This document shows, piece by piece, positions 19,876 to 58,549 of a DNA stretch of 64,000 bases. The notes under the pieces were generated by a model that was not told the origin of the DNA, searched no databases, and was given only the letters and a program-made list of their open reading frames with translations. The first letter of the stretch is position 1. The number at the start of each line of letters is the position of its first letter. This stretch comes from Octopus sinensis (lineage: Eukaryota). The stretch covers positions 82,460,001 through 82,524,000 of the forward strand of contig NC_043002.1 of NCBI RefSeq assembly GCF_006345805.1, written 5' to 3'. A program made the position numbers and the translations under genes.

Positions 19876-20285
19876 GGATCTTTTCGGTTTGAACGGTAGT
19901 TTTTTAAAATAATTTCCACGTAACTAAACACTTTTAAACTTCGTATACTGGTAGAATGTGTTTATAAAACATCTTTTTCTCTTGGCTTTATTGAGAAAAT
20001 TCTATGGTTTGTAAGATATTTGTTTTTGTGTTTTTTCCTTCAATTTCTGCAATTTCAACCAATCAATGACGTCTATTGAAGTAAAAAACATTCTGTGCCG
20101 TATGAACATGTCCCTCGTTTAAGAAACAGATTGGGTTTATTTACATTTGTGAAGAAAAAAAGATACCCTTCCCCCCACCCCTAAAACAGATTGAAATGCA
20201 ATAGATCGATACTAGGGTTATAATTATGGGTAACAAATTTCATATGACACCGCTAGAAAAACTGCCGTTCAAACCGAAAAGATCC
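19876..20285. mobile_element. GGATC-family MITE between ZNF-c and the ZNF-d promoter
   Basis: Both TIRs present, but the flanks (gtatagtc / caaagttg) do not match. Confidence 0.8.
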
Positions 20286-20419
20286 CAAAGTTGTTTTCTT
20301 TTACTATGAGCTCTGTGTGTTTGTACCTAACCATTTTTCGGGTGATCTTATACGGGGATGTGTCCTGACTACACCTTCTTCGAATCACTTGGTGGAAATG
20401 TGAAGGTGAAGTTGTTCAC

Positions 20420-20613
20420 AGAATTAGACAAAGAAAAAACACTGAACTGAATCCAACCAGTTAGTAGAGCCATCTATTGGAGAATTAAAAAAAATACAAT
20501 CATATAAAGGGAAATAACTGCTGCAACACTTGAAACAAGCGCCATTTCAATTATCCATTAAGGTTCTTAATTACTGACCACTGACTCGTTGTTTATATCT
20601 GAATACGGTAAGT
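20420..20613 (+). promoter_or_regulatory. Type-A first exon of ZNF-d
   Basis: GAGCCATCTATTGG 20467-20480; donor at 20608; second copy at 20934. Confidence 0.65.
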
Positions 20614-21072
20614 TGACAAAGATATACTCTAAGGCTATAAAGGTGATAATGATAATAATGTAAATAACAGAATTATGTTAACCTCTCTATTTCACAGTAA
20701 TTATTTCGAAGCGAGAGCAGAACAGCATCAGGAAAATATATTTCCTCGACTTAATGATTTCCAAACTGAAATGTCGACCTGTTGTTTATGAAAATAACAT
20801 GTAATATAAAAGAAATTCGTTGGTAAAATGAGAGTAATGTAGCATAATTAATTAGTAAAATGAGAGGAAACCTATTAGAGAATACCACATTAATTAGTGT
20901 TGTCTTGTTTGTTAATGAGGCACTGATAAAACGGTAAGTTGATAAAGACTTACTTTAAGGTTATATTAATAATAGTAATGATGATGATGATGGTTTGAAA
21001 TTTTGGCCCAGGACCAGCATTGTTTGAGGCGAGCAGAAAGTCGATTACAAGCACACCATATACCTTTAACGG

Positions 21073-21589
21073 GGTACTATTTAAGATGAGTGCTTCCGGT
21101 GCGCGCATCCGAGATGGCTAGTCGTGATTAGTCGATTCTATAACGACTACCTAGCGCGAGTGCGCATATGCTAATTAATAGATGTTTTTTTTTTAAACAA
21201 TATAAATAATTTTTTTACACTCGTAGTGTGTTATTTTTATTTAATTTGTTGGTACAAGTCGCGTAGACTAGTGAATTGTCGCCTGTAGTGGTCTACTTTG
21301 AAAAAAAAAATGTTTGAATGTCCTTAAGGTTGTTTTGCTTTTTTTTCAATGCTTCTAATTGTTTTGTAACGAAAAAAAAAAACGCAATTGTCTTTAAAAT
21401 AATATACACCGTATATCGTTGAAAAATATTACCTAAGCTTCAGTAGGGGCTCGCTATTAACTTAGTTTTTGCAGTGTTGCGCTAATCAGCTCATTTGCAC
21501 ACGCAAGTCACTGTAGGATCGACTACCTACGACTGGCTACCGCGGATGCGCGTGTGCGCGCACCGGGTCCAGTCTACGCGACTAGTACC
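21073..21589. mobile_element. GGTAC-family MITE with left and right arms of different subtypes
   Basis: Left GGTACTATTTAAGATGAG; right GGGTCCAGTCTACGCGACTAGTACC; no TSD. Confidence 0.65.
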
Positions 21590-23125: not shown

Positions 23126-24449
23126 TTAAATAAAGTATATTGAACCATGTATTTGCTTTTGAAGTAAGTGGTCTTGTGTTCATTCCCATTATGTGGTATC
23201 TGGGCCAAGTGTCTTATATTATAGCCCTGGGCCAACTAAAGCCTTGTGAGGGGATTTGCTACATGGAAAGTGTATCATTTACGGAATTATGTGTGTCTGT
23301 CTCTGTGTTTGACTCCCTTTCCTGCCATAAAGCACTTGACTATGGGCATTAGTTTGCTTATATCCTTGTGACTTAGTAATTGGGCATATATGACTGGTGG
23401 AATATGTATCAAACTTAAATATATATACTGGAGTTGGTTCATTTGACTGAACACTTCAAAGAAGTATTCCAGCATGGCCACGGTCCACTTGGTGAACCAG
23501 TAACTGGCACTCTGTGTTTTAGTTTATCCAATCAACTAAAAAGCCTGCTCATGAAAGTAACATGCAAATGGCTGAGCATTCCACAGACATGGGGAGCCTT
23601 AATATAGTCTTCAAGGAGGCACAGCATGACACAGATGGTGAGAAGACTGGCCCTTTGAATTACAGGTTAAACTCATTTTTGACACCTGAGTGGACTGATG
23701 CAAAGTGAAATAAAATGGCTTGGAGACTCATTGCACCACTGTTTATCAAACTCACAACTTTACAATTGTGAGTGAAATACCCTAACCACTAAGCCATGCC
23801 ACTTCACAGGTGAAACAAGTGAAAGGAGGGAAGAGAAAGAAAACAGATAAATAATTAGAGAAATGTAGAAACGCTTCGTCTATATACAGAATGTTGTAAA
23901 ACTTTCAATGCCTCAATGGATTCTGACCCATGCAAACATAGACATTAAATGGATGACAGTGTTGATGTTGTAATATTTGCAATGTTGAATTACTATGTCG
24001 TTTAATAATTATCTTTATCTCACTGCTTCTTTTTCTATTTCAGAATATCACATCATGTTGACGTTAAAGAAATTCCTTCATTCAGACACGTCTCTGATAT
24101 TTTTATTGACTTTCATCAATTAAAGGAAGACCATACATTCATCAACGCATCAACTTTTTTGTATAAATAAAATCTTCAACAAATGATGGGAAAATATTTC
24201 TTCTGGACAATGTAATTAACAGCAACATTTACTGGTTTTCGTTATTTGGAATGTAGAGGAGATGATTCCTTTAAAGTTTGAGGTTGAATAACTTTATGAA
24301 AGAGTTAACAGTTTACATTTTCTGTTTTAGATTTTAAGTAAAATCACTGATGAAAGAAATGTAGCATTAATTTTTTCTCTGACAATTATGTCACAACTGA
24401 ACACAAACATGTTCACAGAAATGAAATAAACACTATCATTGTGATATGT

Positions 24450-25688
24450 ATGACAAATTATCCTCTCATGATGAATCATTTAAATAAACCAAAAAACACT
24501 GATGCAGGAGAGAGGCCATATCACTCTTATATCCATGGTAAATCATTTTCTGAAAATGATTTGACTAGTCATAAATGTATCCATACTGGGGAAAAGCCAT
24601 ATCCGTGTGACGTCTGTGGTAAATCATTTTCTCATAATAGCTCTTTAACTCACCACAAGCGTATTCATACAGGTGAGAAGCCATATCATTGTAACATTTG
24701 TGGTATATCATTCTCTGAAAATAATAATTTGACTAGGCACAAACGCATTCATACTGGGGAAAAACCATATCGCTGTGATATCTGTGGTAAATCATTTTCT
24801 GATAATAGCACTTTAACTAGTCACAATTATACTCATACAGGAGAGAAACCATATCGTTGTGATATCTGTGGTAAATCATTTTCTAGAAGTAGTGAGTTCA
24901 TTACACACAAACGTATTCATACAGGAGAGAAGCCATATCATTGTAATATCTGTGGTAAATCATTCTCTAGTCAGAGTCCTTTGACTAATCACAGGCGTAT
25001 TCATACTGGGGAAAAACCATATCAGTGTGATATCTGTGGTAATTCATTTTCTCAAATTTTCTCTTTAACTAATCACAAACGTATTCATACAGGAGAGAAG
25101 CCATATCATTGTAATATCTGTGGTATTTCATTCTCTAGTAAAAGTCCCTTGACTAATCACAGACGTATTCATACTGGGGAAAAACCATATCAGTGTGATA
25201 TCTGTGGTAAATCATTTTCTCATAAAAGCACTTTAAATTGTCACAAACGTATTCATACAGGAGAGAAACCCTATCACTGTGATATTTGTGGTAAATCATT
25301 TTCTCAAAGTGGAGACTTGTCTAGACACAAACCTACACATACAGGAGAGAAAACATATCATTGTAATATCTGTGGTAAATCATTCTCTAGAAATAGTCAT
25401 TTGACTAGTCACAGACATATTCATACTGGGGAAAAACCATATCACTGTGACATCTGTGGTAAATCATTTTCTAATTGTAGCACTTTTACTTGTCACAAAC
25501 GTATTCATACAGGGGAAAAACCATATCACTGTGACATCTGTGGTAAATCATTTTCTAACAGTAGCACTTTTACTTGTCACAAACGTATTCATACTGGGGA
25601 GAAACCATATCATTGTAATATCTGTGGTAAATGTTTCTCTCAAAAAGGACACTTAAGTACACATGTGAGTATTCATACACAAGTGTAA
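24450..25688 (+). CDS. ZNF-d: C2H2 zinc-finger protein, 13 intact fingers plus 1 degenerate, ends HTQV
   Basis: Finger repeats; first ATG at 24450; acceptor AG at 24042-24043. Confidence 0.95.
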
Positions 25689-32185: not shown

Positions 32186-33346
32186 TTATGGTTTTTCACC
32201 AATATGAATGCGTTTGTGACTAGTCAAGTTACTATTTCTAAAGAATGACGTACCACAGACATTACAATGATACGCTTTCTCTCCTGTGTGTGTAAGTTTG
32301 TGTTTAATCAACTCACCACTTTGAGTGAAACATTTACCACAGGTATCACAATGATATGGCTTCTCCCCTGTATGAATACGTTTGTGACGAGTTAAGTCGC
32401 TATTTTGAGAAAATGATTTACCACAGATATCACACTGATATGGTTTTTCTCCAGTATGACTGCGTTTGTGACTAGTCAAGTTACTAGAAGACAAGGATTT
32501 ACCACAGATGTCACAATGATATGGCTTTTCTCCTGTGTGTGAAAGTTTGTGTTTAACCAAGGCATCACTCCGAGAGTAAGATTCACCACAGATATGACAA
32601 CAATATGGCTTCTCTCCTGTATGCGTATGTTTGTGACAATTTAAGCTGCCATTTTGAGAAAATGATTTACCACAGATATCACACTGATATGGTTTTTCCC
32701 CAGTGTGAACACGTATGTGACTAGTCAAGTTACTATTTCTAGAGAATGATTTGCCACAGATATTACAATGATATGCTTTCTCTCCTGTATGTGTAAGTTT
32801 GTGTTTAGTCAAGTTACTATTTAGAGAGAAAGATTTACCACAGATATCACAGTGATATGGCTTCTCTCCTGTATGAATATGCTCGTGACTAGTTAAAGAA
32901 CTATTATGAGAAAATGATTCACCACAGATATCACACTTATATGGTTTTTCTCCAGTATGAATTCGTTTGTGTCTAGTCAAGTGACTGTTTTCGGAAAATG
33001 CTTTACCACAGATGTCACAATGATATGGTTTTTCTCCTGTATGTGTACGTTTGTGTCTAAACAAGTCACCTCTTCGAGAAAACGATTTACCACAGGTATT
33101 GCAATGATATGGCTTCTCTCCTGTATGTGTACGTATGTGAATAGTCAAGGAACCACTTTGAGAGAATGATTTACCACAGACATCACAGTGATGTGGTTTC
33201 TCTCCTGTATCAATGCACTTGTGTTTGGTTAAGACTCTTTCTTCAGTGAATGATTTACCACAAATATCACAGTGATATGGCTTCTCACTTGAATCAGGTT
33301 TGTTTGGTTTTCTTAAAACATTCATTATAAGATAATAATTTCTCAT
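32186..33346 (-). CDS. ZNF-e: C2H2 zinc-finger protein, 13 units; close paralog of ZNF-c
   Basis: Finger repeats; N-terminal ~110 aa nearly identical to ZNF-c; minus-strand acceptor at 33758-33759. Confidence 0.93.
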
Positions 33347-35212
33347 ACGTATCACAATGATAATGATTTTTTCAATTCTATGAATATATCTGTGTTCAGT
33401 TGTGTCAGTATTTTCAGAGAATAATTTAACACTGTGTTTCTTTCATCTGTATTCTTGCTTAATATCTAAAACGGCAGATGTAAACAGTTAAAACTTTTGT
33501 AAACTTATCCAAGCTTAATTAACCAAGCAATCACTTCCACTACATTCCAGGCTGTGAAGACAAGTGAATGTTGCTATCAATTCCATCGTACAAAAGAAAT
33601 ATTTTCCCATCATTTGTTGAAGATTTTATTCATACAAAGAAGTTGATGAATGTGCCTTATGAATATATGATCTTCCTTTAATTGATGAAAGTCAACAGAA
33701 ATATCAGGGGCATGTCTAAATGAAGAAATTTCTTTAACGTCAATATGATGTGATATTCTGAAATAGAAAAAGAAGCAGTGAGATAAAGAGAATCCTTAAA
33801 CGACATAGTAATTCAACATTGCAAATCTTACAACATCAACACTGTCATCCATTTAATGTCTGTTTGCATGGGTCGGAATCCATTGAGGCTTTGAAAGTTT
33901 TACAACATTCTGTATATAGATGAATCGTTTCAACATTTCTCTAAATATTTACCTGTTTTCCTCTCATTTCACTTGTGAAGTGGCATGGCTAGGTGGTTAG
34001 GGTATATGCCTCCAATTGTAAGGTTGTGAGTTCAATTCCCAGTCACACATTGTGTCCCCAAACCATTTTATTTCACTTTCCCTCAGTCCACTCAGGTGTC
34101 AAAAATGAGTTTAACCTGTAATTCAAAGGGCCAGTCTTCTCACCATCTGTGTCATGCTGTGCCTCCTTGAAGACGATATTAAGGGTCCCCATATCAGTGG
34201 AATGCTCAGCCATTTGCATGTTAATTCCATGAGCAGGCTTTTTAGTTGATTAGATAAACTAAAACACAGAGTGCCAGTTACTGTTTCACCCAGTGGACTG
34301 TGGCCATGCTGGAATACTTCTTTGAAGTGTTTTGTCAAATGAGTCAATTCCAGTTGATATTTAAGAAAGGTGCATATTCTATCAATCTCATTTGCCCAAC
34401 CTCTAAGTCACAGGGATGTAAACAAACACCCATAATCAAGTGCTATGTGGCAGGGAGGGGAAACACAGAGACACACACACACACACACACGTATAATTAG
34501 GAAGTACACCCGCACGATTTTCACTAAGGAAAAAAAAAAACGGATTTTTTGCATGGAATCAAGTATCCTGATCTTGTAATGAGCCACAAACTGGCAAATT
34601 AATGGTGGGATGGGAAACCAGACCCCCACCACCACCACCTGTTGTGACCCCCTTCGGTCATGAATGACCATGGGATTGCACCTAGAAAGTTACCCTCCCC
34701 CGAGGCACAAGTCTGGGCAAGGTTGTCTATGGAAGACCACCAGTCGCCCATGCATATTGGCCTCCCCTCTCCATGCCACCTACGTTATCCAAGGGAGAGG
34801 CAAAGGGGCCGATACAGCTTGGTACCAGTGACATCGCAGCTCATTTATTAACGTGCAAGTGGATGAGCACTCAACAGACACGTGTACCCTTAACGTAGTT
34901 CCCGGGGAGGTTCAGCGTGACAAGGCTGGCCCTTTGAAATGCAGGTACAATAGAAACAGGAAAAAAGAGTGAGAGAAAGTTGTGGTGAAAGAGTACAGCA
35001 GGGTTCAAGAAGCAGATTGGGTTTATTTACATTTTTGAAGAAAAAAATGCTCCTAACCCTAAAACAGATTGAAATGCAATAGATCGATACTAGGGTCATA
35101 ATTATGGGTGACAATTTCGTATGACACCGTTAGGAAAAACTGCCGTTCAAACCGAAAAGATCCCAGAAATGTAGTAGTATCATACTTACAGCCTCAAAGT
35201 AAATCTTTATCA

Positions 35213-36803: not shown

Positions 36804-37649
36804 TCAGTGGTGTTTTGGGAAGAATGACTCACCACAGATATCACACTGATTTGGGTTTTCTCCAGCATGAATACGTTTGTGACTAGTCAAGTGACTATTT
36901 CTAGAGAATGAGGTTCCACAGATACTACAAAAATATGCTTTCTCTCCTGTATGTGTAGGTTGGTGTTTAAGCAAGTGACCTTTTTGAGAGAAAGATTTAC
37001 AACAAATATTACAATGATATGGCTTTTCTCCCGTATGTGTAGTTTTGTGTTTACTCAAATCACCACGTTGAGAGAATGATTTACCACAGATCTCACAATG
37101 GTATGGCTTCTCACCCGTATGAATACGTTTGTGTATTTTTAGGTGACCCGATTCAGAGAACGATTTATCACAGATATCACAGTGAAATGGTTTTTCCCCG
37201 GTATGAATACGTATATGAATAGTCAGCTTACTATTTTCAGAAAATGATTTACCACAGATGTCACATTTATGAGGTCTTTCCCCAGTATGAATACGTCTGT
37301 GACTAGTCAATTGACTGTTTCTAGAGAATGATTTGCTACAGATATCACAATGAAATGGTTTCTCTCCTGTATGTGTAGGTCTGTGTTTAATCAAGTCACC
37401 ACTCTGAGTGAATGATTTACCACAGATATTGCAATGATATGGCTTCTCCCCTGTATGCGTACGTACGTGACGGGTCAACACAATACTTTGAGAGAATGAT
37501 TTACCACAGACATTACAGTGATACGGTTTCACCTTTGTCTGAATGCATTTCTGTTTAGTTAAGACTCTTTCTTCAGTGAAAGGCTTCTCTTCTGTATCCG
37601 GGATTTTTGGTTTATTTACATTACTCATTTTAAGAGAATAATTTGTCAT
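36804..37649 (-). CDS. ZNF-f: C2H2 zinc-finger protein, 8 intact fingers plus half-fingers at both ends
   Basis: Finger repeats; first ATG at 37649 (the track start 37769 is TTG); acceptor at 37858-37859. Confidence 0.9.
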   Translation of the reverse strand: MTNYSLKMSNVNKPKIPDTEEKPFTEERVLTKQKCIQTKVKPYHCNVCGKSFSQSIVLTRHVRTHTGEKPYHCNICGKSFTQSGDLIKHRPTHTGEKPFHCDICSKSFSRNSQLTSHRRIHTGERPHKCDICGKSFSENSKLTIHIRIHTGEKPFHCDICDKSFSESGHLKIHKRIHTGEKPYHCEICGKSFSQRGDLSKHKTTHTGEKPYHCNICCKSFSQKGHLLKHQPTHTGEKAYFCSICGTSFSRNSHLTSHKRIHAGENPNQCDICGESFFPKHH

Positions 37650-38269
37650 ACATGATACAAAGATGTCTTTTTTATTCCAATGAATGTGTTTGCATTCAGT
37701 TGTGTCACTGTTTTCAGAGAATAATTTAATGGTATGTTTCTTTCTTCTCCGATCTTGCTGAATATCCAAAACAGAAGATGTAGACTGTCAAGTCCTTTGT
37801 AAATTCCTTGCCTTCCTTTAATCAATGAAGCGGAACAAAATTATCAGATGTGATACTCTGGAATAGGAAAAGATGCAGTAATAATGAGAGGATGGATGGT
37901 TAAATGACATAATAATTCAACATGGCAACATCAACACTGTCATCCATTTAATGTCTATGTTTGCATGGGTCAGAATTCATTGAGGCATTGAAACTTTTAC
38001 AACATTTTGTCTATAGGCGCAATATTTATATTTTCCTCATTTTTTCTTTGCTTTCAATTGTTGCCCCTGTGAAGTGGCATGGTCCAATTGTTAGAGTAAG
38101 GCTGTGAGTTTGATACCCAGTAGAACACTGTGTCCCCAAGGCACTTTATTTCACATTGCCTCAGTCCACTCAGCTGAATTTGTTTAAAAGGGAGAAGAAA
38201 AGTTTTTCCAAACAAATTCCGATATAATCGTAATCTATACCACCAGAAAGGTATATATTTATATATATA

Positions 38270-38951
38270 TATACTACTAGCGAACAGTGGTCCCGGTGCG
38301 CGCACACGCGCATCAGTGCAAGCTAGTCGATCCTACAACGACTACCTAGCAAAGTAAATAAAACACAACAACACAAAGTAAATATCACAAAAACACAAAG
38401 TAAGGATCGACTAGTCATGACGAGCCGGCGCGGATGCGCGTGTCCGTACACAGGGACCACTATTCGCTAGCAGAACCATAGGTACTCCTAGCAAACTGTG
38501 GTCCCGGTGTTGGGCTCGCGCATCCGCACTAGCTAGACGTAAGTAGCCAATCCTAGGACTTTTAAACCCTAACCCTAACCTTAGTTTGTTTATAAAAATA
38601 ATTGGCATAACTTCGGTATAAGTACCGGATACATTTCGAAAGTGTTTTTTTCATATATATGGGGGGTCTGTGTGAGGGTTAGGGGTGGGAGAAAAGGGTT
38701 TCCGTTATCTTCAGAAATGTAAACAAAGTCACGTGTGTACATATACCGAAGGATCGCCAAATAATTTATTTACTTAGTTTAAAAAATTATTTCCTTTGCA
38801 TTTTATTTACTTTGTTCGAAAAATATTTAATTTTCTTTGATATGTATTCAGCCTTGAAATACAAACATACGCGCAAGTCGTTGTAGGATCGACTACTTAC
38901 GACTACCTAGCGCGAGTGCGCGCACCGGGACCACTGTTCACTAGTAGTACC
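38270..38951. mobile_element. Two tandem GGTAC-family MITEs (38270-38477, 38481-38951) in ZNF-f intron 1
   Basis: Two TIR pairs of the ctagcgaacagtggtcccgg type. Confidence 0.75.
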
Positions 38952-39164
38952 GAATTTCGTTATCCTCACTTTTGAATATGTTTTAGCAGGTATAAGATTG
39001 CTTTCATTGTTTGGTTGGTAATGTGGTGATTAGACGTGGGCTGCAATGTAAATGAAGAATAAAGATTCACTAAATAGGACCAATAACCATTTTAATTTTG
39101 TTGATTCGTTGCAAGACGTTGCGGCATTCTGGTAAAAACAGGAGAGAATACATTGTCAGATGGT

Positions 39165-39450
39165 ACTTACTGTGAGAAGGGCCTCGCGACACCATGTGTT
39201 GGGAGTCGAAGCAAAGAGAGCCAGCAGCATCAGTTCTAGGGCAGTGAGGGACCTGACTTGCCAAAAGGAAAAGAGGAACAGTCTTGGCAATTGGTTTCCT
39301 TTATACGTCTTTTATAATTTCCATTAGAGGCTGTTGTGCTTTGCACATGCGTCGTCGCTACCTGCTTTGTCTCTTCCGGTTTTTTTTAATGTTTAGCCCT
39401 GAGACAATCCAAGGGGACACGACAGGAATGATACGTTGTTGTACATCTCG
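39165..39450 (-). promoter_or_regulatory. Type-B first exon / promoter of ZNF-f
   Basis: Reverse-complement homolog of 55050-55408; ETS-like CCGGAA at 39374-39379; donor caca|GTAAGT at 39170. Confidence 0.6.
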
Positions 39451-41606: not shown

Positions 41607-43450
41607 ATCATCATCATCATCGTTTAACGTCCGTTTTCCGCGCTAGCACGGGTTGGACGGTTCGACCGCGGTCTGGGAAGCCACGGGCTGCACCAGGCTC
41701 CAGTCTGATCTGGCAGTGTTTCTACAGTTGGATGCCCTTCCTAACGCCAACCACTCCGCGAGTTTAGTGGGTGCTTTTTACGTGCCACCGGCACAGGTGC
41801 CAGGGGAGTCTGGCATTGGCCACGATCGGTTGGTGCTTTTAACATGCCACCGGCATGGAAGCCAGTCAAGGCGGCGCTGGCATTGGCCACGTTCGGATGG
41901 TGCTTTTTATGTGCCACCGGCACAGAAGCCAGTCGAGGTGGCGCAGGTATCGGCCATGTTCGGATGGTGCTTTTTATGTGCTACCGGCACAGAAGCTAGT
42001 TGATGCGGCGCTGGCATCGGCCACGTTCAGATGGTGCTTTTTATGTGCCACCGGCACAGGTATCACAACTACTATTTCCATTGATATTTATTTCGATGTT
42101 CATGTACTTGACTCAATAGGTCTCCTCAAGTACAGCGGGATGTTCTGGAATCCAAGGTACTTTGAATGGGCAAGCGCTATGCGGGACTGGTGCAGGAAGC
42201 AGCCCGGGTCTTTGCAGTCACAGCATATCTCAAGAGATCTCGGTCCTTCGTCATTGCATCTGTGAGGCCCAACGCTCTGAGGTCATGCTTGATTACCTCA
42301 TCCCATGTCTTCCTGGGTCTACCTCTCCCCCTGATACCTTCAACTGTTTGGGAGTGGCACTTCTTCACACATCTCTCCTCATCCATCCGCAGTACATGAC
42401 CATACCATCGCAAGCGTCGCTCTTGCACACCACATCTGATGCTTCTTATGTCCAGCATTTCTCTCAGGGTGCTTACCCTTTGTCGTGCACGCACACTGAC
42501 ATTACACATCCAGCGGATCATGCTAGCTTCATTTCTTTCAAGTCTACGCATGTCCTCTGCAGTTACAGCCCATGTTTCACTACCATGAAGCATGGCAGTT
42601 CGCACACATGCATCATACAATCTACCTTTCACTCTGAGCGAGAGACCCTTTGTCGCCAGTAGGGGTAGGAGCTTCGTATTCTAGTGGTGACACTCTCTGA
42701 GCGTCCACCTCCACTACTAACTTGGTCACCCAGGTAGTGGAAACTATCAACTACTTCTAGTTTCTCCCCCTGGAGTGTGATGGAATCTGTTTTGTGAGTA
42801 TCTGTGGTGTCTATTGTCTCTGTGCATCTGCCGCACATGAAAGCTATCTTATCAGTTAATTTCCCTTTGATGTTGCTGCACCACTTATGCGTCCCTAGCT
42901 TACACTGGGTACATCTTATGGAGTTTCTACCTACACCTTTCCTACAGATCGAGCAGGGCCACCTGCCTGAGGGGGTGTGTACTGAGTTCGCCTTTCTTAC
43001 TATAACTTTGGTCTTTGCTACATTTACTCTAAGGCCCTTTGATTCTGACCCTTGCTTCCACACCTGAAATTTCTTTTCTAGTTCCGGTAGTGATTCTGCT
43101 ATGAGAGCCAGGTCATCAGCATAGAGGAGCTCCCAGGGGCAACCTGTCTTGAATTCTTCTGTTATTGCCTGGAGGACTATGATGAATAAAAGGGGACTGA
43201 GGGCTGAGCCTTGGTGTACACCTACTTCTACCCGGAATTCTTCACTATATTCGTTGCCAATTCTAACTTTGCTGACAGCCTCTCTGTATAGGGCCTGTAC
43301 AGCCCTTATTAGCCATTCGTCAATCTCCAGTTTCCGCATCGACCACCAGATAAGGGATCGGGGGACCCTGTCAAAGGCTTTCTCCAAGTCCACAAAAGCT
43401 ATGTAGAGAGGTTTATCTTTAGCTAGGTACTTCTGCAGTTGTCGGACCAA
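41607..43450 (-). mobile_element. 5'-truncated RTE-clade LINE (RT with Cys-rich insert, minisatellite 3' UTR, (GAT)n tail)
   Basis: Translation FVDLEKAFDRVP...GVHQGSALSPLLF...LLYADDL...RLRWYGHV; frameshifted. Confidence 0.9.
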
Positions 43451-49571: not shown

Positions 49572-50093
49572 CTGCAAATCCCCGAGTATAGTCCGCCCTT
49601 GAGTATAATACGCAGGGGATTTTTAGGGGGCTGTACCTCTGAAAAACCTAAACCTTGTGTATAATACACACCTCTTCTCTAACTTGAGTTGTGCGTAATT
49701 AAGCCAGCAGCACCTAGTCGAACAAACACTTCCGTGCATGGGTAATACAATAATGGTGATGTTCTTAACTGTTATATGGGAATGTAAATATGTTTGCAAA
49801 TTGTTTTTGTTACATGTTATTCTGTGTTCTGAATACTTTTATTTTAATAAATGTTGCTTACTGCAAGTTAGGGGCGATTCTTTTATGGCTTCATTGCTTT
49901 CAGGCTTAGCTTCAGGTATTTTCGCGCCCGACATCACAAAATGCGTCTGAATAAACATTGCCGGACAGCAAATAGAGACTCGGACATTGCTTAGAAAATA
50001 TTTTTCATTTTTAACCTCATATATAGGATGCACTAGGGATTTTGACCTTTACATTTTGGGAAAAAACTGCGGATTATACTCGAGGATTTACGG
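49572..50093. mobile_element. Tc1/mariner-type MITE just after the ZNF-g stop codon
   Basis: TA|CTGCAAATCCCCGAGTATA...TATACTCGAGGATTTACGG|TA; absent at the paralogous ZNF-f site. Confidence 0.85.
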
Positions 50094-50109
50094 TACTCAC
50101 ATCTGTACT

Positions 50110-50982
50110 TCAGTGGCGTTTTGGAAAGAATGACTCACCACAGATATCACACTGATATGGGTTTTCTCCAGCATGAATACCTTTGTGACTAGTCAAGTGA
50201 CTATTTCTAGAGAATGAGGTTCCACAGATACTACAAAAATATGCTTTCTCTCCTGTATGTGTACGCTTGTGTTTAAGCAAGTGACCTTTTTGAGAGAAAG
50301 ATTTACAACAGATATTACAATGATATGGCTTCTCTCCTGTATGACTACGTTTGTGAATAATTAAAGTGTTATTTTCAGCAAATGATTTACCACAAATATC
50401 ACACTGATATGGCTTCTCTCCTGTATGTGTAGTTTTGTGTTTACTCAAATCACCACGTCGAGAGAATGATTTACCACAGATATCACAAGGGTATGGCTTC
50501 TCACCCGTATGAATACGTTTGTGTATATTTAGGTGACCCGATTCAGAGAACGATTTATCACAGATATCACAGTGAAATGGTTTTTCCCCGGTATGAATAC
50601 GCTTATGAATAGTCAGCTTACTAGTTTCAGAAAATGATTTACCACAGATGTCACATTTATGAGGTCTTTCCCCAGTATGAACACGTCGGTGCCTAGTCAA
50701 TTGACTGTTTCTAGAGAATGATTTACCACAGATATCACAATGAAATGGTTTCTCTCCTGTATGTGTAGGTCTGTGTTTAATCAAGTCACCACTCTGAGTG
50801 AATGATTTACCACAGATATTGCAATGATATGGTTTCTCCCCTGTATGCGTACGTACGTGACGGGTCAACACAATACTTTGAGAGAATGATTTACCACAGA
50901 CATTACAGTGATATGGCTTCTCTCCTGTATCAGGGATTTTTGGTTTATTTACATTACTCATTTTAAGAGAATAATTTGTCAT
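50110..50982 (-). CDS. ZNF-g: C2H2 zinc-finger protein, 9 intact fingers plus a partial one; close paralog of ZNF-f
   Basis: Finger repeats; first ATG at 50982; acceptor at 51360-51361. Confidence 0.92.
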   Translation of the reverse strand: MTNYSLKMSNVNKPKIPDTGEKPYHCNVCGKSFSQSIVLTRHVRTHTGEKPYHCNICGKSFTQSGDLIKHRPTHTGEKPFHCDICGKSFSRNSQLTRHRRVHTGERPHKCDICGKSFSETSKLTIHKRIHTGEKPFHCDICDKSFSESGHLNIHKRIHTGEKPYPCDICGKSFSRRGDLSKHKTTHTGEKPYQCDICGKSFAENNTLIIHKRSHTGEKPYHCNICCKSFSQKGHLLKHKRTHTGEKAYFCSICGTSFSRNSHLTSHKGIHAGENPYQCDICGESFFPKRH

Positions 50983-52925
50983 ACACGACACAAAGATGTC
51001 TATTTTATTCCAATGAATATGGTAGAATTCAGTTGTGTCATTATTTTCAGAGAATAATTTAATATTATATTTTTTTATCTCTGATTTTGTTTAATATCCA
51101 AAACAGATGAAAACTGTCAAGTCCTTTGTAAAGTTAATCAAGTTTATTTAACCTGTAATGCAATCATCTCCTCTACATTCCACACAGTGAAGACAAGAAA
51201 ACGTTGCTGTTAATTCCATTGTCCAGAAGAAATATTTTCCAATTCTTTATCATAAATTTTTACTTATATAAAGTAGCTGATTTATTGATGAAAGTGCTTT
51301 GTAAATGCCTCGTCTTCCTTTAATTGATGATGCGGAATAAAATCATCGGATGTGATATTCTGAAATAGGAAAAGATACAATAAGAAAAGAGAAGATGGAT
51401 GGTTAAATGACATAATAATTCAACATGGCAAACATTACATTAACTTTCATCCATTAAATGTCTACGTTTGCACGGACCAGAATCCATTGAGACATAGAAA
51501 CTTTTTCAACATTTTGTCCATGGGTGAATTGTTTTTATATTTCTCTATTTTTTTTTATTCGTTTCAGTTATTTGACTGCAGCCATGCTGGAGCACTGCCT
51601 TTAGTCGAGAAAATCGACCCCAGGACTTATTCTTTGTAATCCTAGTACTTATTCTATCGGTCTCTTTTGCCAAACCGCTAAGTTACGTGGACGTAAACAC
51701 ACCAGCATCAGTTGTCAAGCGATGTTGGGGGGACAAACACATACATATATATATACACATATATACGACGAGCTTCTTTCAGCTTCCGTCTACCAAATCC
51801 ACTCACAAGGCTTTGGTCAGCCAGAGGCTATAGTAGAAGACATTTGCCCAAGGTGCCACGCAGTGGGACTGAACCCGGAACCATGTGGTTGGTAAGCAAG
51901 CTACTTACCATACAGCCACTCCTATGCCTATTTATTTATATTTTCCTCATTGTTTCTTTGCTTTAAATTGTTTCCCCTGTAAAGTGGCAAGGTCTAATGG
52001 TAAGGGCAAGGCTGTGAATCTGATACCCAGTGACACACTGTGTCCCCAAGGCACTTTATTTCACATTGCTCCAGTCCACTCAGCTGGCAAAAATAAGTTG
52101 CAGCTGTAATTCAAAGGGCCATCCTTGTCGTATTGTATGTCATGCTGAATGTTCCTGAGGACTATGTTAAGGGTCCACATGTCTGTAGAACACGCAGCCA
52201 TTTGCATGTTACTTCTAACACAAAGACACACATAATTGTAGGAATGAAAGTTTCCATGCACCAAATTCCCTCATAAGGCTTTAGTTGGCCCAGGGCTATA
52301 GTAGAAGGCACTTTGTCCAGCTGCCTCATAGTGGGGATGAACACAGGACCACTTGCTTTGAAAGCAAATACATGGTTCAATATCCTTTATTTATAATTTA
52401 GAGAAATATTTGGCTGCTATTTCCAGCAGCTTGTGTGATCTATGTAAAAGCTCTTTTACTGAACAAGACCATCATCATTGTCAGCATTTTAACATCCCCT
52501 CTTCCGAGCTTGAGGCAGATATTCTACAGCTGGATGTCCTTCCTGTTGCCAATCCTCATCTGTTTCCAAGTAAAATGATATTCCACCAAGTCCAAACATA
52601 TTTACACAGAATATTGGAAAGAAAGAACATCGCCTCCATGAGGATAAGGCTTCAGTTGGCCCAGGGCTATAGTAGAAGGCACTTTGTCGAGATGCCACAT
52701 AGTGTGGGTCAACACAGGACCACTCGGTTTGAAAGCAAATACATGTACCTAAAACTACAGATAGCTTTCTTTGTCATGTTACAGGTCTTAGGATAAAAGC
52801 CATGTGATGACTGCTATTTCTAGCATAATAAAAGACCAGCAGAGGATGAGTTTTAGTGGGTATATGATTGTTTTCATTGTTTGGTTGGTAATATGGTGAT
52901 TAGACGTGGGTTACATGTAAATGAA

Positions 52926-53805
52926 GGTACTACTTAAGAAGAGTGGTCCCGGTGCGCACACTCGCGCAGGCTAGTCGATCCTACGACTACCTAGCAAAGT
53001 AAATAAAACACAAAATAAATAATGTATCTTTTCGGTTTGAACGGCAGTTTTTTAAAATAATTTCCACGTAACTAAACACTTTTAAACTTCGTATACTGGT
53101 AGAATGTATTTATAAAACATCTTTTTCTCTTGGCTTTATTGAGAAAATTCTATAGTTTGTAAAACAAAGTAACGATCGACTAGTCACGACTAGCTAGCGC
53201 GGATACGCGAGTGCGCGCCCCGGGACCACTCGGTACTACATGAGAACAGTGGTCCCGGTGCGGACTAGTCGATCCTTACTTTGTGTTTTATTTACTTTGT
53301 GTTTGGCATAACTTCGGTGTAAGTACCGGATACATTTCGAGAAAGTGTTTTTTTTATATATGGGTTAGGGGTGGGAGAAAAGGGTTTGTTATCTTCAGAA
53401 ATATAAACACAGTCACACATTTCAAAAAAGTATTTTTTTTATATATGGAGGGTTAGGGTTAGGGTTTGTGTTAGGGGTAGGAGAAAAGGGTTTCTGTTAT
53501 CTTCAGAAATGTAAACAAAGTCACGTGTGTACATATACCGAAATATCGCCACATACTCTAACCCCCCATATATAAAAAAAAACACTTTTTTGAAATGTAT
53601 CTGGTACTTCCGGAAGTACACCGTACTTGTACCGTAAGATCGCCCTGTTTTATTTACTTTGTTTAACAAAAATTATCTATTTTGGGTTTTATTTACTTTG
53701 CTAAGTAGTCGTAGTAGGATCGACTAGTCACGACTAGATAGCGCAGATGCGCGCACCGGGACCACTGTTCGCTAGTAGTACTGATCACTCTTCTTAAGTA
53801 GTACC
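52926..53805. mobile_element. GGTAC MITE containing a GGATC fragment and a nested GGTAC copy (53232-53781)
   Basis: A 9-bp TSD GTAAATGAA is recovered after removing the adjacent hAT; single-copy site at 39048-39056. Confidence 0.8.
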
Positions 53806-53811
53806 GTAAAT

Positions 53812-54008
53812 CAGTGGTTTTCAACCAGGGTTCCACGGAACCTTAGGGTTCCGCAAGAAGTTACAAAACTGCTAAAATCGGCAGTAATTTTTAATTCTCC
53901 TGTGCAGATATGTGTGCATAAGACTATTAAACTATTGCACAGGGGTTCCTCGAGCCAGTGGAATGTTTCCTTGGGGTTCCGCTCTAGCAAAAAGTTTGAA
54001 AAGCACTG
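53812..54008. mobile_element. hAT-type MITE
   Basis: CAGTGGTTTTCAAC...TTGAAAAGCACTG; 8-bp flanks CCGTAAAT / CCGTAAGT. Confidence 0.8.
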
Positions 54009-54058
54009 CCGTAAGTGAAGAATAAAGATTCACTAAATAGGACCAAAAACAATTTTAA

Positions 54059-54367
54059 GGTACTACTAGCGAACAGTGGTCCCGGTGCGCGCTCTCGCAT
54101 ACTCGCGCATCCGCAGCCAGCTAGTCGATCCTTACTTTGTTTTTGTGTTTTATTTACTTTGTTTAAAGAATTATTTACTTCTTGTTTTTGTGTTATATTT
54201 ACTTTGTTTAACAAAAATTATTTACTTTGTTTAAAAAAATTATTTTGTTTACAAAATTTATTTATTTTGTGTTTTATTTACTTTTCTAGGTAGCCGTTCT
54301 AGGGTCGACTACTTACGACTAGATAGCGCGACTGCGCCCACCGAGACCACTGTTCACTAGTAGTACC
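54059..54367. mobile_element. GGTAC MITE X (left inversion junction)
   Basis: Complete TIR pair; preceded by CAATTTTAA. Confidence 0.85.
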
Positions 54368-54488
54368 GAAATGTTTTAATGAAATATACGTTTTGAGATC
54401 AAATTTTTATATAATTTTACGAACATCATGTAGGAAATTACCTTAATGTTACTTTTTCTTATTACAACCTTAAAATAAATCTTTATCA

Positions 54489-54630
54489 ACTTACCGTATT
54501 CTCATGCATCAGTGCCCGATATTAAATCACAAGGAATATTTAAATTTTCCACTGCTGTAAAAGTTATTCCCCTTTAAACGATTAAATTTCTCCGATTCTC
54601 CCCGAGATGGCTCTACGCGCTAGAAATCAC
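54489..54630 (-). promoter_or_regulatory. Type-A first exon, now facing ZNF-g
   Basis: AGATGGC core in 54600-54613; minus-strand donor aatacg|GTAAGT at 54494. Confidence 0.6.
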
Positions 54631-55049
54631 CTTAGAGTCGGATCATGGCTGCTATTTTCAGCACGGTGGTATCTCGTAGATACCCTAATCTATAATTTAA
54701 ATAATTAAGACCAAATATCTTACAAACCATAGAATTTTCTCAAGAACGCCAAGAGAAAAAGATGTTTTATAAACACATTCTACCAGTATACGAGGTGGAT
54801 CTTTTCGGTTTGAACGGCAGTTTTTAACATAATTTCTAGGTAACTAAACAATTTTAAAGATCCTACGAGGTTTAAAATTTTTTAGTTACGTAGAAATAAT
54901 TTTAAAAATCTGCCGGTCAATCCGAAAACATCCAATAATTTTTTTAATAAAGTAAAATGCCACACAAAAACACAAAGTAAGGATCGACTAGTCACGACTA
55001 ACAAGCGTGTGTACGCAAGTGCGCACACCGGGACCCCTGTTCTCAAGTA

Positions 55050-55331
55050 GTACCCAACAACGTAGCATTCTCGTCGTGTCTCCTTGGATTGTCTCAGGGC
55101 TAAACATAAAAAAAACCGGAAAGAGACAAAGCAGGCAGCGACGACGCATGTGCAAAGCACAACAGCTTTTAATGGAAATTATGAAAGACGCATAAAGGAA
55201 CTCAATAGCCAAAACTGTTCCTCTTTTCCTTTTGGCAAGTCAGGTCCCTCACTGCCCTAGAACTGATGCTGCTGGCTCTCTTTGCTTCGACTCCCAACAC
55301 ATGGTGTCGCGAGGCCCTTCTCACAGTAAGT
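55050..55331 (+). promoter_or_regulatory. Type-B first exon, now facing ZNF-h
   Basis: CCGGAA 55116-55121; donor caca|GTAAGT at 55326; homolog of the ZNF-f cassette. Confidence 0.6.
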
Positions 55332-55409
55332 ACCATCTGACAATGTATTCTCTCCTGTTTTTACCAGAATGCCGCAACGTCTTGCAACGAATCAACAAAA
55401 TTAAAATTG

Positions 55410-56038
55410 GGTATTACTAGCGAAGACTGGACCCGGTGCTCGCACAGTCGCGCGTCCGCGCTAGCTTGTCGTAAGTAGTCGATCCTACAACGACTTGCGC
55501 GTATGCAAATGAGTTGATTTTACAGAATAGAATAAAAGAATTTTTAAAAAAAAGTAAATAAATTATTTCTTAGAACAATGTATATGATTTTTTTATACAA
55601 ATCAAATAAAATGTGTGTGATATATTCTTTTAGTTTTCATATTCTTAATTTTTAATCGTGTGTGTGTGTGTATACACACCGATACAAATAGATATTATAT
55701 ATGTGTTTATGTGTGATATATTCTTTTACTAGTTTTTAGTTTTTGGACAGCATCCATAGTAGGTACATCATTATATATATATATGTGTGTGTGTATGTGA
55801 GTATATATATATATATGTGTGTGTGTATGTGCGCATATTTTCTTGTTTGTTTATTTACACTAAACCCCCCACCCCTTTGTCTTGATCATTAATTAGATCC
55901 ATTGGTTGTCTTCCAACCTACAACACAACTCATTTGCATACGCGCAAGTCATTGTAGGATCGATTACTTACGACTAGCTAGTGCGGACACGCGTCTGCGT
56001 GTGGGCGCGCACCGTGTCCAGTCTTCGCTAGTAGTACC
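55410..56038. mobile_element. GGTAC MITE Y (right inversion junction)
   Basis: Complete TIR pair of the gaagactgga subtype; preceded by TTAAAATTG. Confidence 0.85.
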
Positions 56039-57055
56039 TGTTTATTGAAGAACCGCAGTGACCTATGCATACCAGTCTAGCCTTTCAATGCCACCAATGT
56101 TATCCAAGGGTTAGGCACAGATTGATAGAGCAGAGCAATCGATACAGAGTATGTACAAAAATGCCTAAGAGTTTTTGTTTGATTTGGCTGTTATTTCTAG
56201 CATGTGTGTAGCCTGCTAGTAGGCCGTAGACTCGGGAGTGCAGGAGGTTCTTGTAATTTTTTGTTTTTCCTGAAAAGTTGAAATTTTGCAACCAAATTTA
56301 TTCAGAATCATAAGCTCCGTATTTCTCTAAGTATTTTCTCCCCAAAAACTTCTGAAGATAGTGAAAAGTGAAGAAATGGGTGGGTGTGGGTAATTGAAAT
56401 TATGAAATAGGGATTTTGCAAGTTCTTAAAAGAATTATTTTTCAGAATTGTAATCTCCATAGCCGAAAACGTGGGTTTCATTAAAAAACAAAACTTTTCA
56501 GTGGTGGTTTCAGATGTTTAGGCATACCAGTCTTTCAACAACTGAGTGAATTCTGACCCATATGAAACTAGGCATTAAATGAATGACAGTGTTGATGCTG
56601 TAATATTTGCAATGTTGAATTACTATATCATTTATCTTTCACTCGTTATCTTACTGCTTCTTTTCTTATTTCAGAATATCCCACCTTGTTGAACTGAAAG
56701 AAATTTCTTCATTGAGATGTACCTTTGATAGTTTTATCAACTTTTATTGACTAAAGGAAGATGATATATTTATAAGGAGCCTTCATCAATACATCGCCCT
56801 TTTTATATTGATATAATCTATGTCAAACAACGGCGAAATGTTTTTCTTGTCTTCACTGTCTGGAATGTAGAGGAGGTGATTGCTTTAGAAGTTGAATAAC
56901 TTTACGAAGGACTTGACAGTTTTCACCTGCTAATTTAGATATTAAGTAAGATCACAGCTGAAAAACATAGCATTAAATTATTCCCTGAAAATAGGAACTG
57001 AACTGAACACAAAAATATTCATAGAAATGAAAAAAACAATATCTTTGTGATATAT

Positions 57056-58549
57056 ATGAGAAATTATTCTCTCAGAATGAGTAATTTAATAAAATCTAAA
57101 AACCCTGATACAAGAGAGAAACCATATTCCTGTGATGTCTGTGGAAAATCATTCTCTCGAAGAACTCACTTCACCATTCACAAACGTATACATACAGGGA
57201 AGAAGCCATATCAGTGTGATATCTGTGGTGAATCATTCTCTAGAATTGGTCACTTGACTAGTCACAGACGTAGCCATACTGGGGAAAAACCATATCATTG
57301 TGATTTGTGTGGTAAATCTTTTTCTGAAAAGAGCACTTTAACTAGTCATAAACGCATTCATACAGGAGAGAAGCCATATCATTGTAAGATCTGCGGTAAA
57401 TCATTTTCTGATGCCAGTCACTTAAAAAGGCACACACGTATTCATACAGGTGAGAAGCCATATCACTGTGATATCTGTGGTAAATCATTCTCTTGTAGTA
57501 GCCACTTGTCTGATCATAAACGTATTCATACGGGTGAGAAGCCATATCATTGTGATATCTGTGGTAAATCATTCTTTTGTAGTAGCAACTTGTCTAAACA
57601 TAAACGTATTCATACAGGAGAGAAGCCGTATCACTGTAATATCTGTGGTAAATCGTTTTCTGGAAATTGCAATTTAACTAGTCACAAGCGTATTCATACA
57701 GGAGAGAAGCCGTATCACTGTAATATCTGTGGTAAATCATTCACTTTTAAAAGTCAGTTGACTAATCATGAGCCTGTTCATACAGGAGTGAAACCATATC
57801 CTTGTGATATCTGTGGCAAATCATTCTCTGAAAATGGCAGTTTAACAATTCACAAGCGTGTTCATACGGGTGAGAAACCATATCGTTGTGATAACTGTGG
57901 TAAATCATTCCCTTCTAACAGTCACTTGGCTAATCATAAGCGTATTCATTCTGGAGAAAAACCATATCACTGTGATATATGTGACAAATCATTCTCTCAG
58001 AGTAGTGGCTTAAGTAATCACCAGCGCGTTCACTCTGGAGAGAAACCATATTATTGTGATATCTGTGGTAACTCATTTCCTTGTAATAGAAACTTGTCTA
58101 AACATAGACGTATTCATACAGGAGAGAAGCCATATCACTGTGATATCTGTGGTAAATCGTTTTCTGAAAATAGCAATTTAACTGTTCACAAGCGTACACA
58201 TACAGGAGAGACACCATATCATTGTAATATCTGTGGTAAATCTTTCACTACTAAAAGTCACCTGACTAGACACAAACGCATTCATACAGGAGTGAAACCA
58301 TATCCTTGTGATATCTGTGGCAAATCATTCTCTCAAAGTTGCAAATTAACTGTTCACAAGCGTATTCATACAGGAGAGAAACCATATCAGTGTAATATCT
58401 GTGGCAAATCATTCTCTGAAGGAGGTGTCTTAACTAGACATCAGCCTGTTCATACAGGGGAGAGACCATATCAGTGTGATATCTGTGGTAAATCATTCTC
58501 ACGGAAATCCCACTTAAGTAGACATAAGAGTATACACACACAAGTGTGA
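57056..58549 (+). CDS. ZNF-h: C2H2 zinc-finger protein, 17 fingers, ends HTQV; flanks paralogous to ZNF-a
   Basis: Finger repeats; first ATG at 57056; acceptor AG at 56673-56674; 5' UTR and 3' flank align with ZNF-a. Confidence 0.95.
   Translation: MRNYSLRMSNLIKSKNPDTREKPYSCDVCGKSFSRRTHFTIHKRIHTGKKPYQCDICGESFSRIGHLTSHRRSHTGEKPYHCDLCGKSFSEKSTLTSHKRIHTGEKPYHCKICGKSFSDASHLKRHTRIHTGEKPYHCDICGKSFSCSSHLSDHKRIHTGEKPYHCDICGKSFFCSSNLSKHKRIHTGEKPYHCNICGKSFSGNCNLTSHKRIHTGEKPYHCNICGKSFTFKSQLTNHEPVHTGVKPYPCDICGKSFSENGSLTIHKRVHTGEKPYRCDNCGKSFPSNSHLANHKRIHSGEKPYHCDICDKSFSQSSGLSNHQRVHSGEKPYYCDICGNSFPCNRNLSKHRRIHTGEKPYHCDICGKSFSENSNLTVHKRTHTGETPYHCNICGKSFTTKSHLTRHKRIHTGVKPYPCDICGKSFSQSCKLTVHKRIHTGEKPYQCNICGKSFSEGGVLTRHQPVHTGERPYQCDICGKSFSRKSHLSRHKSIHTQV

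What the first reader, a model, noticed from the sequence alone, without database searches (positions are those of the whole stretch)
54050..55409. MITE-end-mediated inversion of a bidirectional promoter that swapped first exons between two ZNF genes
Seen: 54017-54058 matches the ZNF-f intron (about 39052-39095) in direct orientation. The continuation of that intron and the type-B exon then appears reverse-complemented at 55050-55408. The 9-mer CAATTTTAA (54050-54058) abuts the first base of MITE X, and its exact reverse complement TTAAAATTG (55401-55409) abuts the first base of MITE Y. The ZNF-f locus has a single copy (CCATTTTAA, 39087-39095). Nine bp is the TSD length of this MITE family (see 52926). 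The other ends of X and Y share no TSD, and X and Y are different TIR subtypes. Established: this is the pattern expected from reversed-ends alternative transposition, as described for Ac/Ds, where two neighbouring element ends insert into a nearby target and invert the intervening DNA. Inference: before the event, type B fed ZNF-g (as it does its paralog ZNF-f) and type A fed ZNF-h (as it does its paralog ZNF-a). Now A (donor 54494) faces ZNF-g and B (donor 55326) faces ZNF-h. Both genes keep a usable donor-acceptor pair, so this would be a lossless promoter swap that rewires TF expression.
Basis: partly seen in the sequence, partly recalled or inferred. Interest (0 to 1): 0.92.

Follow-up and report, generated by a model that had tools for sequence, protein, structure and literature searches.

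The report
MITE-mediated flip of a promoter block
A 1.35-kb block between two head-to-head zinc-finger genes, holding two oppositely pointing putative first exons, has been turned around, and its junctions carry the base-exact scar of a transposition that used one end from each of two neighbouring miniature transposons; whether this changed gene expression is untested.

Summary
The intron of ZNF-f runs continuously across one copy of a 9-mer (CCATTTTAA). In the g/h locus the same sequence breaks there. The left part (54011-54058) stays in direct orientation. The continuation (55055-55409, holding the 'type B' exon) lies 1.35 kb away and is reverse-complemented.

Each junction sits on the terminal base of a MITE (X at 54059, Y at 55410). 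Each carries CAATTTTAA or its exact reverse complement. Nine bp is this family's target-site duplication length. Of 171 terminus pairs in the window, only this pair matches 9/9.

X lies inside the inverted block and Y just outside. Each element keeps its own TIR subtype, and their other flanks do not match. This is the published signature of reversed-ends (alternative) transposition, and it argues against recombination between repeats.

The exon swap follows from the geometry and fits the paralogue tree (f+g and a+h are sisters). It is not shown. There are no transcripts, no second genome and no reads. The type A exon here is no closer to ZNF-a's copy than to the others.

Verdict: a well-supported natural example of a known mechanism, probably in an octopod ZNF cluster. 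The regulatory consequence is plausible but untested.

The parts
54011..54058 (-). Last piece of ZNF-g intron 1 still colinear with ZNF-f (f 39048-39095). It ends at the left breakpoint.
   Evidence: blastn 93.8% direct; 3 mismatches in 48
54050..54058 (.). Target-site duplication copy 1, CAATTTTAA, abutting the X terminus
54059..54367 (.). MITE X (309 bp). Both ends are the 'GAACAGTGGTC' subtype. It lies inside the inverted block. Its own flanks are not a TSD (4/9).
   Evidence: TIR 40 nt, 88% (I6)
54368..54494 (-). Start of the intron downstream of the type A donor. The sequence is unique in the window.
54495..54625 (-). Type A putative non-coding first exon. Its donor ...GAATACG|GTAAGT now points at ZNF-g (acceptor 51359). 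The 5' limit is approximate.
   Evidence: Aligns with the A exons of a, b, d and e. The 18-mer donor motif has 7 copies, all pointing at a ZNF gene, against 0.06 expected.
54626..54711 (.). Unique spacer between the 5' sides of A and B (putative shared promoter DNA)
   Evidence: No other match in the window
54712..55054 (.). MITE W. Its left end is missing. Its right terminus abuts the end of the f homology at 55055.
55055..55325 (+). Type B upstream region plus putative first exon, inverted relative to ZNF-f (f 39441-39171). Its donor ACA|GTAAGT now points at ZNF-h (acceptor 56675).
55326..55400 (+). First 75 bp of the ancestral g/f intron, now the start of the h intron
   Evidence: Identical to f 39096-39170
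55401..55409 (.). Target-site duplication copy 2, TTAAAATTG (exact reverse complement of copy 1), abutting the Y terminus
55410..56038 (.). MITE Y (629 bp). It has long TIRs and both ends are the 'GAAGACTGGAC' subtype. It lies just outside the inverted block. Its own flanks are not a TSD (5/9).
   Evidence: I1 and I5
39048..39441 (-). Uninverted reference in paralogue ZNF-f: intron, single target CCATTTTAA (39087-39095), and the B exon on the minus strand
52926..53805 (.). MITE M1 with nested M2 (53232-53781). These are ordinary insertions that establish the 9-bp TSD (GTAAATGAA; the empty site is f 39049-39057).
51353..51359 (-). First bases of ZNF-g exon 2, starting at 51359 on the minus strand, just after the acceptor (TTTCAG|AATATCA)
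   Evidence: The acceptor is invariant in all eight paralogues
56675..56681 (+). First bases of ZNF-h exon 2, starting at 56675, just after the acceptor (TTTCAG|AATATCC)
   Evidence: in-frame stops upstream of the ATG

Best explanation
The window is a cluster of eight C2H2 zinc-finger genes, probably from an octopod.

Before the event, the interval between ZNF-g (minus strand) and ZNF-h (plus strand) read as follows: g intron, single target CAATTTTAA, rest of the intron, B exon on the minus strand (feeding g, as in its sister ZNF-f), MITE W, A exon on the plus strand (feeding h), MITE X, an unknown spacer, MITE Y, and the h acceptor. X and Y had one terminus each facing the other.

A transposase cut those two facing termini, X's present left end and Y's left end, as if they belonged to one element. 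It inserted them into the target about 1 kb away in the g intron with a 9-bp staggered cut. The spacer was lost. Everything from X to the target (now 54059-55409, 1,351 bp) was inverted. The 9-mer was duplicated in inverted orientation, one copy against each participating terminus.

Shown: the inversion, its base-exact junctions and the transposition scar.

Inferred: the mechanism (reversed-ends alternative transposition) and the consequence. The non-coding first exon A with its upstream DNA now faces ZNF-g, and B now faces ZNF-h. Both proteins are unchanged because the coding sequence starts in exon 2.
For: (1) There is a colinear paralogue reference with a single target copy. In g/h the 9-mer is duplicated and inverted, exactly at two MITE termini.

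(2) Both copies share CAATTTTAA, against CCATTTTAA in f. They therefore copy each other.

(3) Nine bp is the family's TSD length, shown by M1 and M2 with empty-site controls.

(4) X-left/Y-left is the only 9/9 pair among 171 terminus pairs, with about 0.01 expected.

(6) X and Y are not chimeric. X-left matches X-right 35/40 and Y-left matches Y-right 34/40, against 28-33/40 between elements. Each keeps its own subtype motif at both ends. Their interiors are unrelated.

(7) The non-participating flanks do not match: X-right versus rc(Y-right) is 2/9.

(8) For the swap: the tree of exon-2 leaders gives (f,g) and (a,h) at 100% support. f uses B. A-type donors serve a, b, d and e. All eight genes share one acceptor. 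In-frame stops show the first exons are non-coding.
Against: There is one assembly and no reads, so a mis-assembly cannot be formally excluded.

No orthologous locus could be fetched. This genome's ZNFs are absent from the protein collection.

The lost spacer and the original TSD partners of X and Y are unobservable by construction.

X and Y belong to different TIR subtypes (31/40 identical at the participating ends). One transposase must have accepted both. No transposase gene lies in the window.

Several other family copies in the window also lack TSDs: 406-821, 38270-38477 and 38481-38951. 'No TSD' is therefore weak evidence on its own.

For the swap there are no transcript data. A_g is the most divergent A exon (65-68%) and is not closest to ZNF-a's copy. 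The a/h homology ends 154 bp upstream of the acceptor.
Confidence: 0.7

Rival explanations
1. Cut, flip and re-ligate. X first inserted normally at the target, making an ordinary direct TSD. Later a transposase cut X's right end and Y's left end. The released segment between them (54368-55409) was re-joined upside down by end-joining. The consequence for the exons is the same. The duplication would have a different origin and no spacer would be lost.
For: It gives the same order: t|X ... t'|Y. It still explains why both breakpoints are at MITE termini.
Against: It predicts that X's right flank is the reverse complement of Y's TSD (CAATAAACA). The observed flank is GAAATGTTT, a 2/9 match. The t'|Y junction is perfect, so a footprint that erased only the other junction must be assumed.
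Confidence: 0.12
2. Ectopic (non-allelic homologous) recombination between two inverted MITE copies, one of which had inserted at the target.
For: It would also leave t and t' at the left ends of the two elements. This is the mechanism shown for the Galileo inversions in Drosophila buzzatii (PMC2775673).
Against: It requires chimeric elements and exchanged TSDs at both pairs of ends. X and Y each have matching own-subtype ends. The second flank pair matches 2/9. The elements share only about 80% identity over about 60-100 bp of TIR and have unrelated interiors.
Confidence: 0.03
3. Assembly artefact: a contig piece was placed in the wrong orientation between repeats.
For: The region is dense in repeats, and only one assembly was seen.
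Against: A mis-orientation would not create a second, inverted copy of a 9-mer exactly at two different MITE termini. X and Y are not near-identical repeats that could confuse an assembler. The B copy is not a pasted copy of f: it has 13 mismatches in its upstream 159 bp.
Confidence: 0.05
4. TE-independent inversion by staggered breaks or replication template switching, with the MITEs as bystanders or later colonisers.
For: Staggered-break inversions leave inverted duplications at their ends (from general knowledge; not checked here).
Against: Both junctions fall on the terminal base of a MITE, and the duplication has exactly the family's TSD length. This coincidence is not expected without a transposase.
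Confidence: 0.03

Closest known systems
Reversed-ends (alternative) transposition of maize Ac/fAc. It produces inversions, and chimeric genes between the p1 and p2 paralogues (PMC1592236; bioRxiv 10.1101/2021.03.08.434479; PMC9910405).
   Same: Two termini from different, neighbouring class II elements act together. They insert into a nearby target. The segment from one element to the target is inverted. One TE ends up inside and one just outside. A TSD of family length lies at both participating termini. Regulatory and exon parts of linked paralogues are re-paired.
   Different: Here it is a natural, historical event inferred from a single sequence, in an animal. It involves non-autonomous MITEs of two TIR subtypes with a 9-bp TSD (Ac has 8 bp). 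The inversion is very small (1.35 kb). The transposase is unknown, and the progenitor allele has not been observed.
P-element hybrid element insertion in Drosophila (Gray, Tanaka and Sved 1996, as cited in PMC2775673)
   Same: An aberrant transposition using ends of two element copies, giving inversions with a TSD at the new junctions.
   Different: Hybrid element insertion uses copies on sister chromatids or homologues, usually the same element. X and Y are different elements on one chromatid.
Galileo-mediated natural inversions in Drosophila buzzatii (PMC2775673)
   Same: A natural inversion with a TIR transposon at each breakpoint, diagnosed from TSD patterns against an uninverted reference.
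   Different: Those arose by ectopic recombination, with chimeric copies and both TSD pairs exchanged. Here the copies are not chimeric and only one new TSD pair exists.

Membership tests
Reversed-ends / alternative transposition inversion | A class II element at each breakpoint, one inside the inverted segment and one just outside it | tested here: met
   X (54059-54367) is inside and Y (55410-56038) is just outside. The criterion was read.
Reversed-ends / alternative transposition inversion | A new duplication of the family's TSD length at the two participating termini, in inverted orientation, with a single copy in the unrearranged sequence | tested here: met
   CAATTTTAA and TTAAAATTG match 9/9. 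ZNF-f has one copy. The family TSD is 9 bp from M1 and M2.
Reversed-ends / alternative transposition inversion | The non-participating ends keep unrelated old flanks, and the elements are not chimeric | tested here: met
   The other flank pair matches 2/9. Within-element TIR identity exceeds between-element identity.
Reversed-ends / alternative transposition inversion | A progenitor with the two termini facing each other, and loss of the DNA between them | not testable with these tools
   This needs an uninverted allele or an outgroup. None could be fetched.
Reversed-ends / alternative transposition inversion | A cut-and-paste transposase that recognises both termini | not testable with these tools
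   No transposase ORF is in the window. The participating ends match 14/16 over the first 16 nt and 31/40 over 40 nt. The superfamily is unassigned; from memory, a 9-bp TSD fits Mutator-like or Merlin elements.
NAHR between inverted repeats | Chimeric flanking copies with both TSD pairs exchanged | tested here: not met
MITE (non-autonomous TIR element) | Short, with terminal inverted repeats, a TSD on ordinary insertions, and no coding capacity | tested here: met
   X is 309 bp and Y is 629 bp, both with TIRs. M1 and M2 have a 9-bp TSD. No ORF of 150 aa or more lies in them.
Bidirectional promoter with alternative non-coding first exons | Divergent transcription starts less than 1 kb apart, with spliced transcripts joining each first exon to its gene | not testable with these tools
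   Indirect evidence only. There are consensus GTAAGT donors on opposite strands. The 5' sides are about 430 bp apart, 343 bp of which is MITE W. The A donor motif is conserved. The acceptor is invariant. A 194-bp tract is identical between the two B copies.

The most novel reading that the evidence does not exclude
Reversed-ends transposition by abundant MITEs may be a recurrent, natural way in which expanding cephalopod ZNF clusters re-pair promoters and first exons with gene bodies. Here it would have produced a fixed, protein-neutral promoter exchange that changed where or when two transcription factors are expressed.
Probability: 0.15. Interest if true: 0.8.

Novelty: new member of a known kind. 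Interest (0 to 1): 0.6.

Why it matters
Alternative transposition is well documented in engineered or monitored maize, rice and Drosophila stocks. Base-resolved natural examples in animal genomes do not turn up readily: a full-text search for alternative transposition plus MITE, inversion and promoter returned no comparable case.

This case has an internal control, a paralogue that preserves the empty site. That lets the mechanism be read from a single sequence. If the two first exons are real, the inversion exchanges the regulatory inputs of two neighbouring transcription-factor genes without touching either protein. It would be a concrete route by which transposons diversify expression inside fast-expanding ZNF clusters.

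The signature is also easy to search for genome-wide: two family termini within a few kb whose flanks are reverse complements of each other.

Tried and rejected
(1) Fetching orthologous or other-individual loci failed. Exact look-up of eight ATG-start ZNF proteins found none in the collection. A full-length ZNF-g search was swamped by generic C2H2 proteins. A search on its N-terminal 48 residues gave one weak hit. A metagenome scan with a 30-mer of the B exon gave no hits. No cross-genome test was therefore possible.

(2) I used ZNF-a as an uninverted reference for the other breakpoint. The a/h homology starts only 154 bp upstream of the acceptor. A_g versus A_a is 65% over 173 bp. This gave no support and no contradiction.

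(3) I suspected a second inverted A exon at the c/d locus relative to e. The shared flank (35003-35165) is a dispersed repeat with at least six copies, so I dropped this.

(4) I considered reading 54059-55054 as a single 996-bp element, because the X-left and W-right arms pair at 82-93%. Its flanks are not a TSD, and the similarity is family-wide.

(5) I considered capture of a copy of f's B exon between MITEs. That would not explain why the copy starts exactly at the 9-mer where the g homology stops.

(6) An Rfam scan of 50000-58000 found nothing.

(7) The best named hit of the RT ORF (42632-43450, minus strand) is Octopus vulgaris at 71%. This suggests an octopod or cephalopod origin and nothing more.

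Full report
**What the window is.** The window holds eight intron-containing C2H2 zinc-finger genes:

| Gene | Coordinates | Strand |
|---|---|---|
| a | 3449-5299 | + |
| b | 11612-12832 | + |
| c | 17405-18820 | - |
| d | 24441-25688 | + |
| e | 32186-33355 | - |
| f | 36804-37769 | - |
| g | 50110-50991 | - |
| h | 57047-58549 | + |

The genes sit among MITEs, SINE-like repeats and a decayed reverse transcriptase. The best named relative of that reverse transcriptase is an Octopus vulgaris protein at 71% identity. An octopod or other cephalopod origin is therefore likely but not proven.

All eight genes share an invariant splice acceptor, TTTCAG|AATATC, about 380 nt upstream of the start codon. 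The leader has in-frame stops. Whatever lies upstream is therefore a non-coding first exon.

ZNF-f and ZNF-g are sister paralogues: 91% identical in the coding exon and colinear through the intron. The colinearity runs up to g position 54058 (f 39095).

The continuation of the f sequence (f 39087-39441) covers the rest of the intron, a GTAAGT donor and the 'type B' exon with its upstream DNA. In the g/h locus it reappears at 55409-55055, reverse-complemented, at 95% identity.

Joining 54011-54058 to the reverse complement of 55055-55400 restores one colinear alignment to f. It has 16 mismatches and two 1-bp gaps in 393 columns.

The two pieces overlap by exactly nine bases. CAATTTTAA (54050-54058) touches the first base of MITE X (54059). 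TTAAAATTG (55401-55409) touches the first base of MITE Y (55410). ZNF-f has one copy, CCATTTTAA. The two g/h copies share the A at position 2 that f lacks, so they are copies of each other.

**Nine bp is the family's duplication length.** Two ordinary insertions in the same intron show this:
- M1 (52926-53805) is flanked by GTAAATGAA, which is single-copy in f (39049-39057).
- M2 is nested in M1's terminus with a 7/9 duplication.

I compared the flanks of 19 termini pairwise, in the geometry expected for the two ends of one transposition event. X-left/Y-left was the only 9/9 pair. M1's own ends came next at 7/9. About 0.01 such 9/9 pairs are expected by chance.

**One coordinate correction.** X ends at 54367, not 54370.

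**Mechanism.** The layout is t|X ... inverted DNA ... t'|Y. One element lies inside the inverted block and the other just outside. The duplication sits at the two termini at the breakpoints. This is the published description of reversed-ends transposition inversions in maize (bioRxiv 10.1101/2021.03.08.434479).

Working the reaction backwards gives a unique progenitor order:
1. g intron
2. single target
3. rest of the intron
4. B exon on the minus strand
5. MITE W
6. A exon on the plus strand
7. X, with its present left terminus facing right
8. a spacer, now lost
9. Y
10. the h acceptor

**The main rival is recombination between inverted copies.** It predicts chimeric elements and a second, exchanged TSD pair (PMC2775673). 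Neither is seen:
- X's two ends share one subtype (GAACAGTGGTC, 35/40 identical).
- Y's two ends share another (GAAGACTGGAC, 34/40 identical).
- Between-element identity is 28-33/40.
- The interiors of X and Y are unrelated.
- X's right flank versus the reverse complement of Y's right flank matches 2/9.

**A second rival** is normal insertion of X, followed by excision of the inter-element segment and its re-ligation upside down. It fails the same 2/9 test unless a footprint erased one junction while leaving the other perfect. I keep it at about 0.12.

**An assembly error is unlikely.** It would not manufacture an inverted 9-mer at two different MITE termini. The B copy is also not a pasted copy of f, because its upstream 159 bp carries 13 mismatches.

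**Weak points of the mechanism:**
- Only one assembly was available.
- There is no uninverted allele or outgroup.
- The window holds no transposase gene.
- The two participating ends belong to different subtypes.
- Several other family copies in the window also lack TSDs, so 'no TSD' is not special on its own.

**The exon swap.** The 'type A' element is a real, conserved feature. It is a block of roughly 130 nt ending in ACGGTAAGTTGATAAAGA. That motif occurs seven times against 0.06 expected. Every copy points at a ZNF gene: a twice, b, d twice, e, and now g.

Type B occurs only upstream of f and, inverted, facing h. A tree of the exon-2 leaders groups (f,g), (a,h) and (c,e), each with 100% support. 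The reconstructed progenitor (B to g, A to h) therefore gives sister genes the same first-exon type, and the present arrangement does not.

Against over-reading it:
- A_g is the most divergent A copy. It is 65-68% identical to the others, which are 73-85% identical to one another.
- A_g is no closer to ZNF-a's copy than to any other.
- The a/h homology stops 154 bp upstream of the acceptor.
- No transcript evidence is available.

The 5' sides of A and B lie about 430 bp apart, of which 343 bp is the truncated MITE W. 'Bidirectional promoter' is plausible but untested.

**An unexpected detail.** A run of 194 consecutive bases is identical between f (39089-39282) and the inverted copy (55400-55214). 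The rest of the f/g non-coding sequence is about 9-15% diverged. The chance of such a run at 9% divergence is about 1e-8.

The tract covers the last seven bases of the duplicated 9-mer, the first 75 bp of the intron and the 3' 112 bp of exon B. It begins two bases inside the end of homology set by the inversion. The simplest reading is gene conversion between the two B copies after the inversion. Strong constraint is the alternative.

**Comparison and verdict.** The event works like reversed-ends Ac/fAc transposition. That mechanism is known to invert DNA and to re-pair regulatory and coding parts of linked paralogues (PMC1592236).

Every sequence-level criterion that could be tested here is met. 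The progenitor configuration and the transposase cannot be tested with these tools.

It is a new, natural and unusually clean member of a known kind. The structural finding is well supported and the regulatory consequence is open. I score interest at 0.6.

Noticed in passing
window 55214-55400 and 39089-39282: A 194-bp tract is perfectly identical between the two B copies (the 3' part of the exon, 75 bp of intron and 7 bp of the TSD) in a background of about 9-15% divergence. It starts 2 bp inside the inversion breakpoint. This suggests gene conversion after the inversion, or strong constraint.
   Followed up: partly
window 406-821; 21073-21589; 38270-38477; 38481-38951: Other copies of the same MITE family have no recognisable 9-bp TSD (1-5 of 9). 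The 21073/21589 pair has ends of two different subtypes. F1 and F2 sit 3 bp apart. These may be relics of further aberrant transposition or deletion events.
   Followed up: partly
window 54712-55054: MITE W lacks its left end. Its intact right terminus marks exactly where the f/g homology stops (f 39441). A deletion or second rearrangement therefore touched the DNA between the A and B exons.
   Followed up: partly
window 1254-1271 and 1588-1605; 20605-20622 and 20931-20948: ZNF-a and ZNF-d each have two A-type donors about 330 bp apart, belonging to two sequence subgroups (A1 and A2). These may be alternative first exons. The g copy has only the A1 type.
   Followed up: no
window 18820-20400: ZNF-c has no recognisable A- or B-type first exon upstream, although its sister ZNF-e has an A exon 1.8 kb upstream.
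   Followed up: partly
window 53812-54008: A 197-bp MITE of a different family (CAGTGG...CACTG ends, 8-bp TSD CCGTAAAT/CCGTAAGT, hAT-like from memory) inserted at the edge of M1. It splits M1's right TSD copy.
   Followed up: partly
window 42177-43450 (minus strand): A reverse-transcriptase remnant is split into two adjacent ORFs (273 and 151 aa). The best named relative is an Octopus vulgaris protein at 71% identity. This is the only taxonomic clue obtained.
   Followed up: partly
window 37640-37770 and the exon-2 leader of ZNF-f: ZNF-f has a deletion of roughly 130 nt in its exon-2 leader relative to g. It also has a partial first finger (…[24 protein letters not shown]…). It may be decaying.
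   Followed up: no
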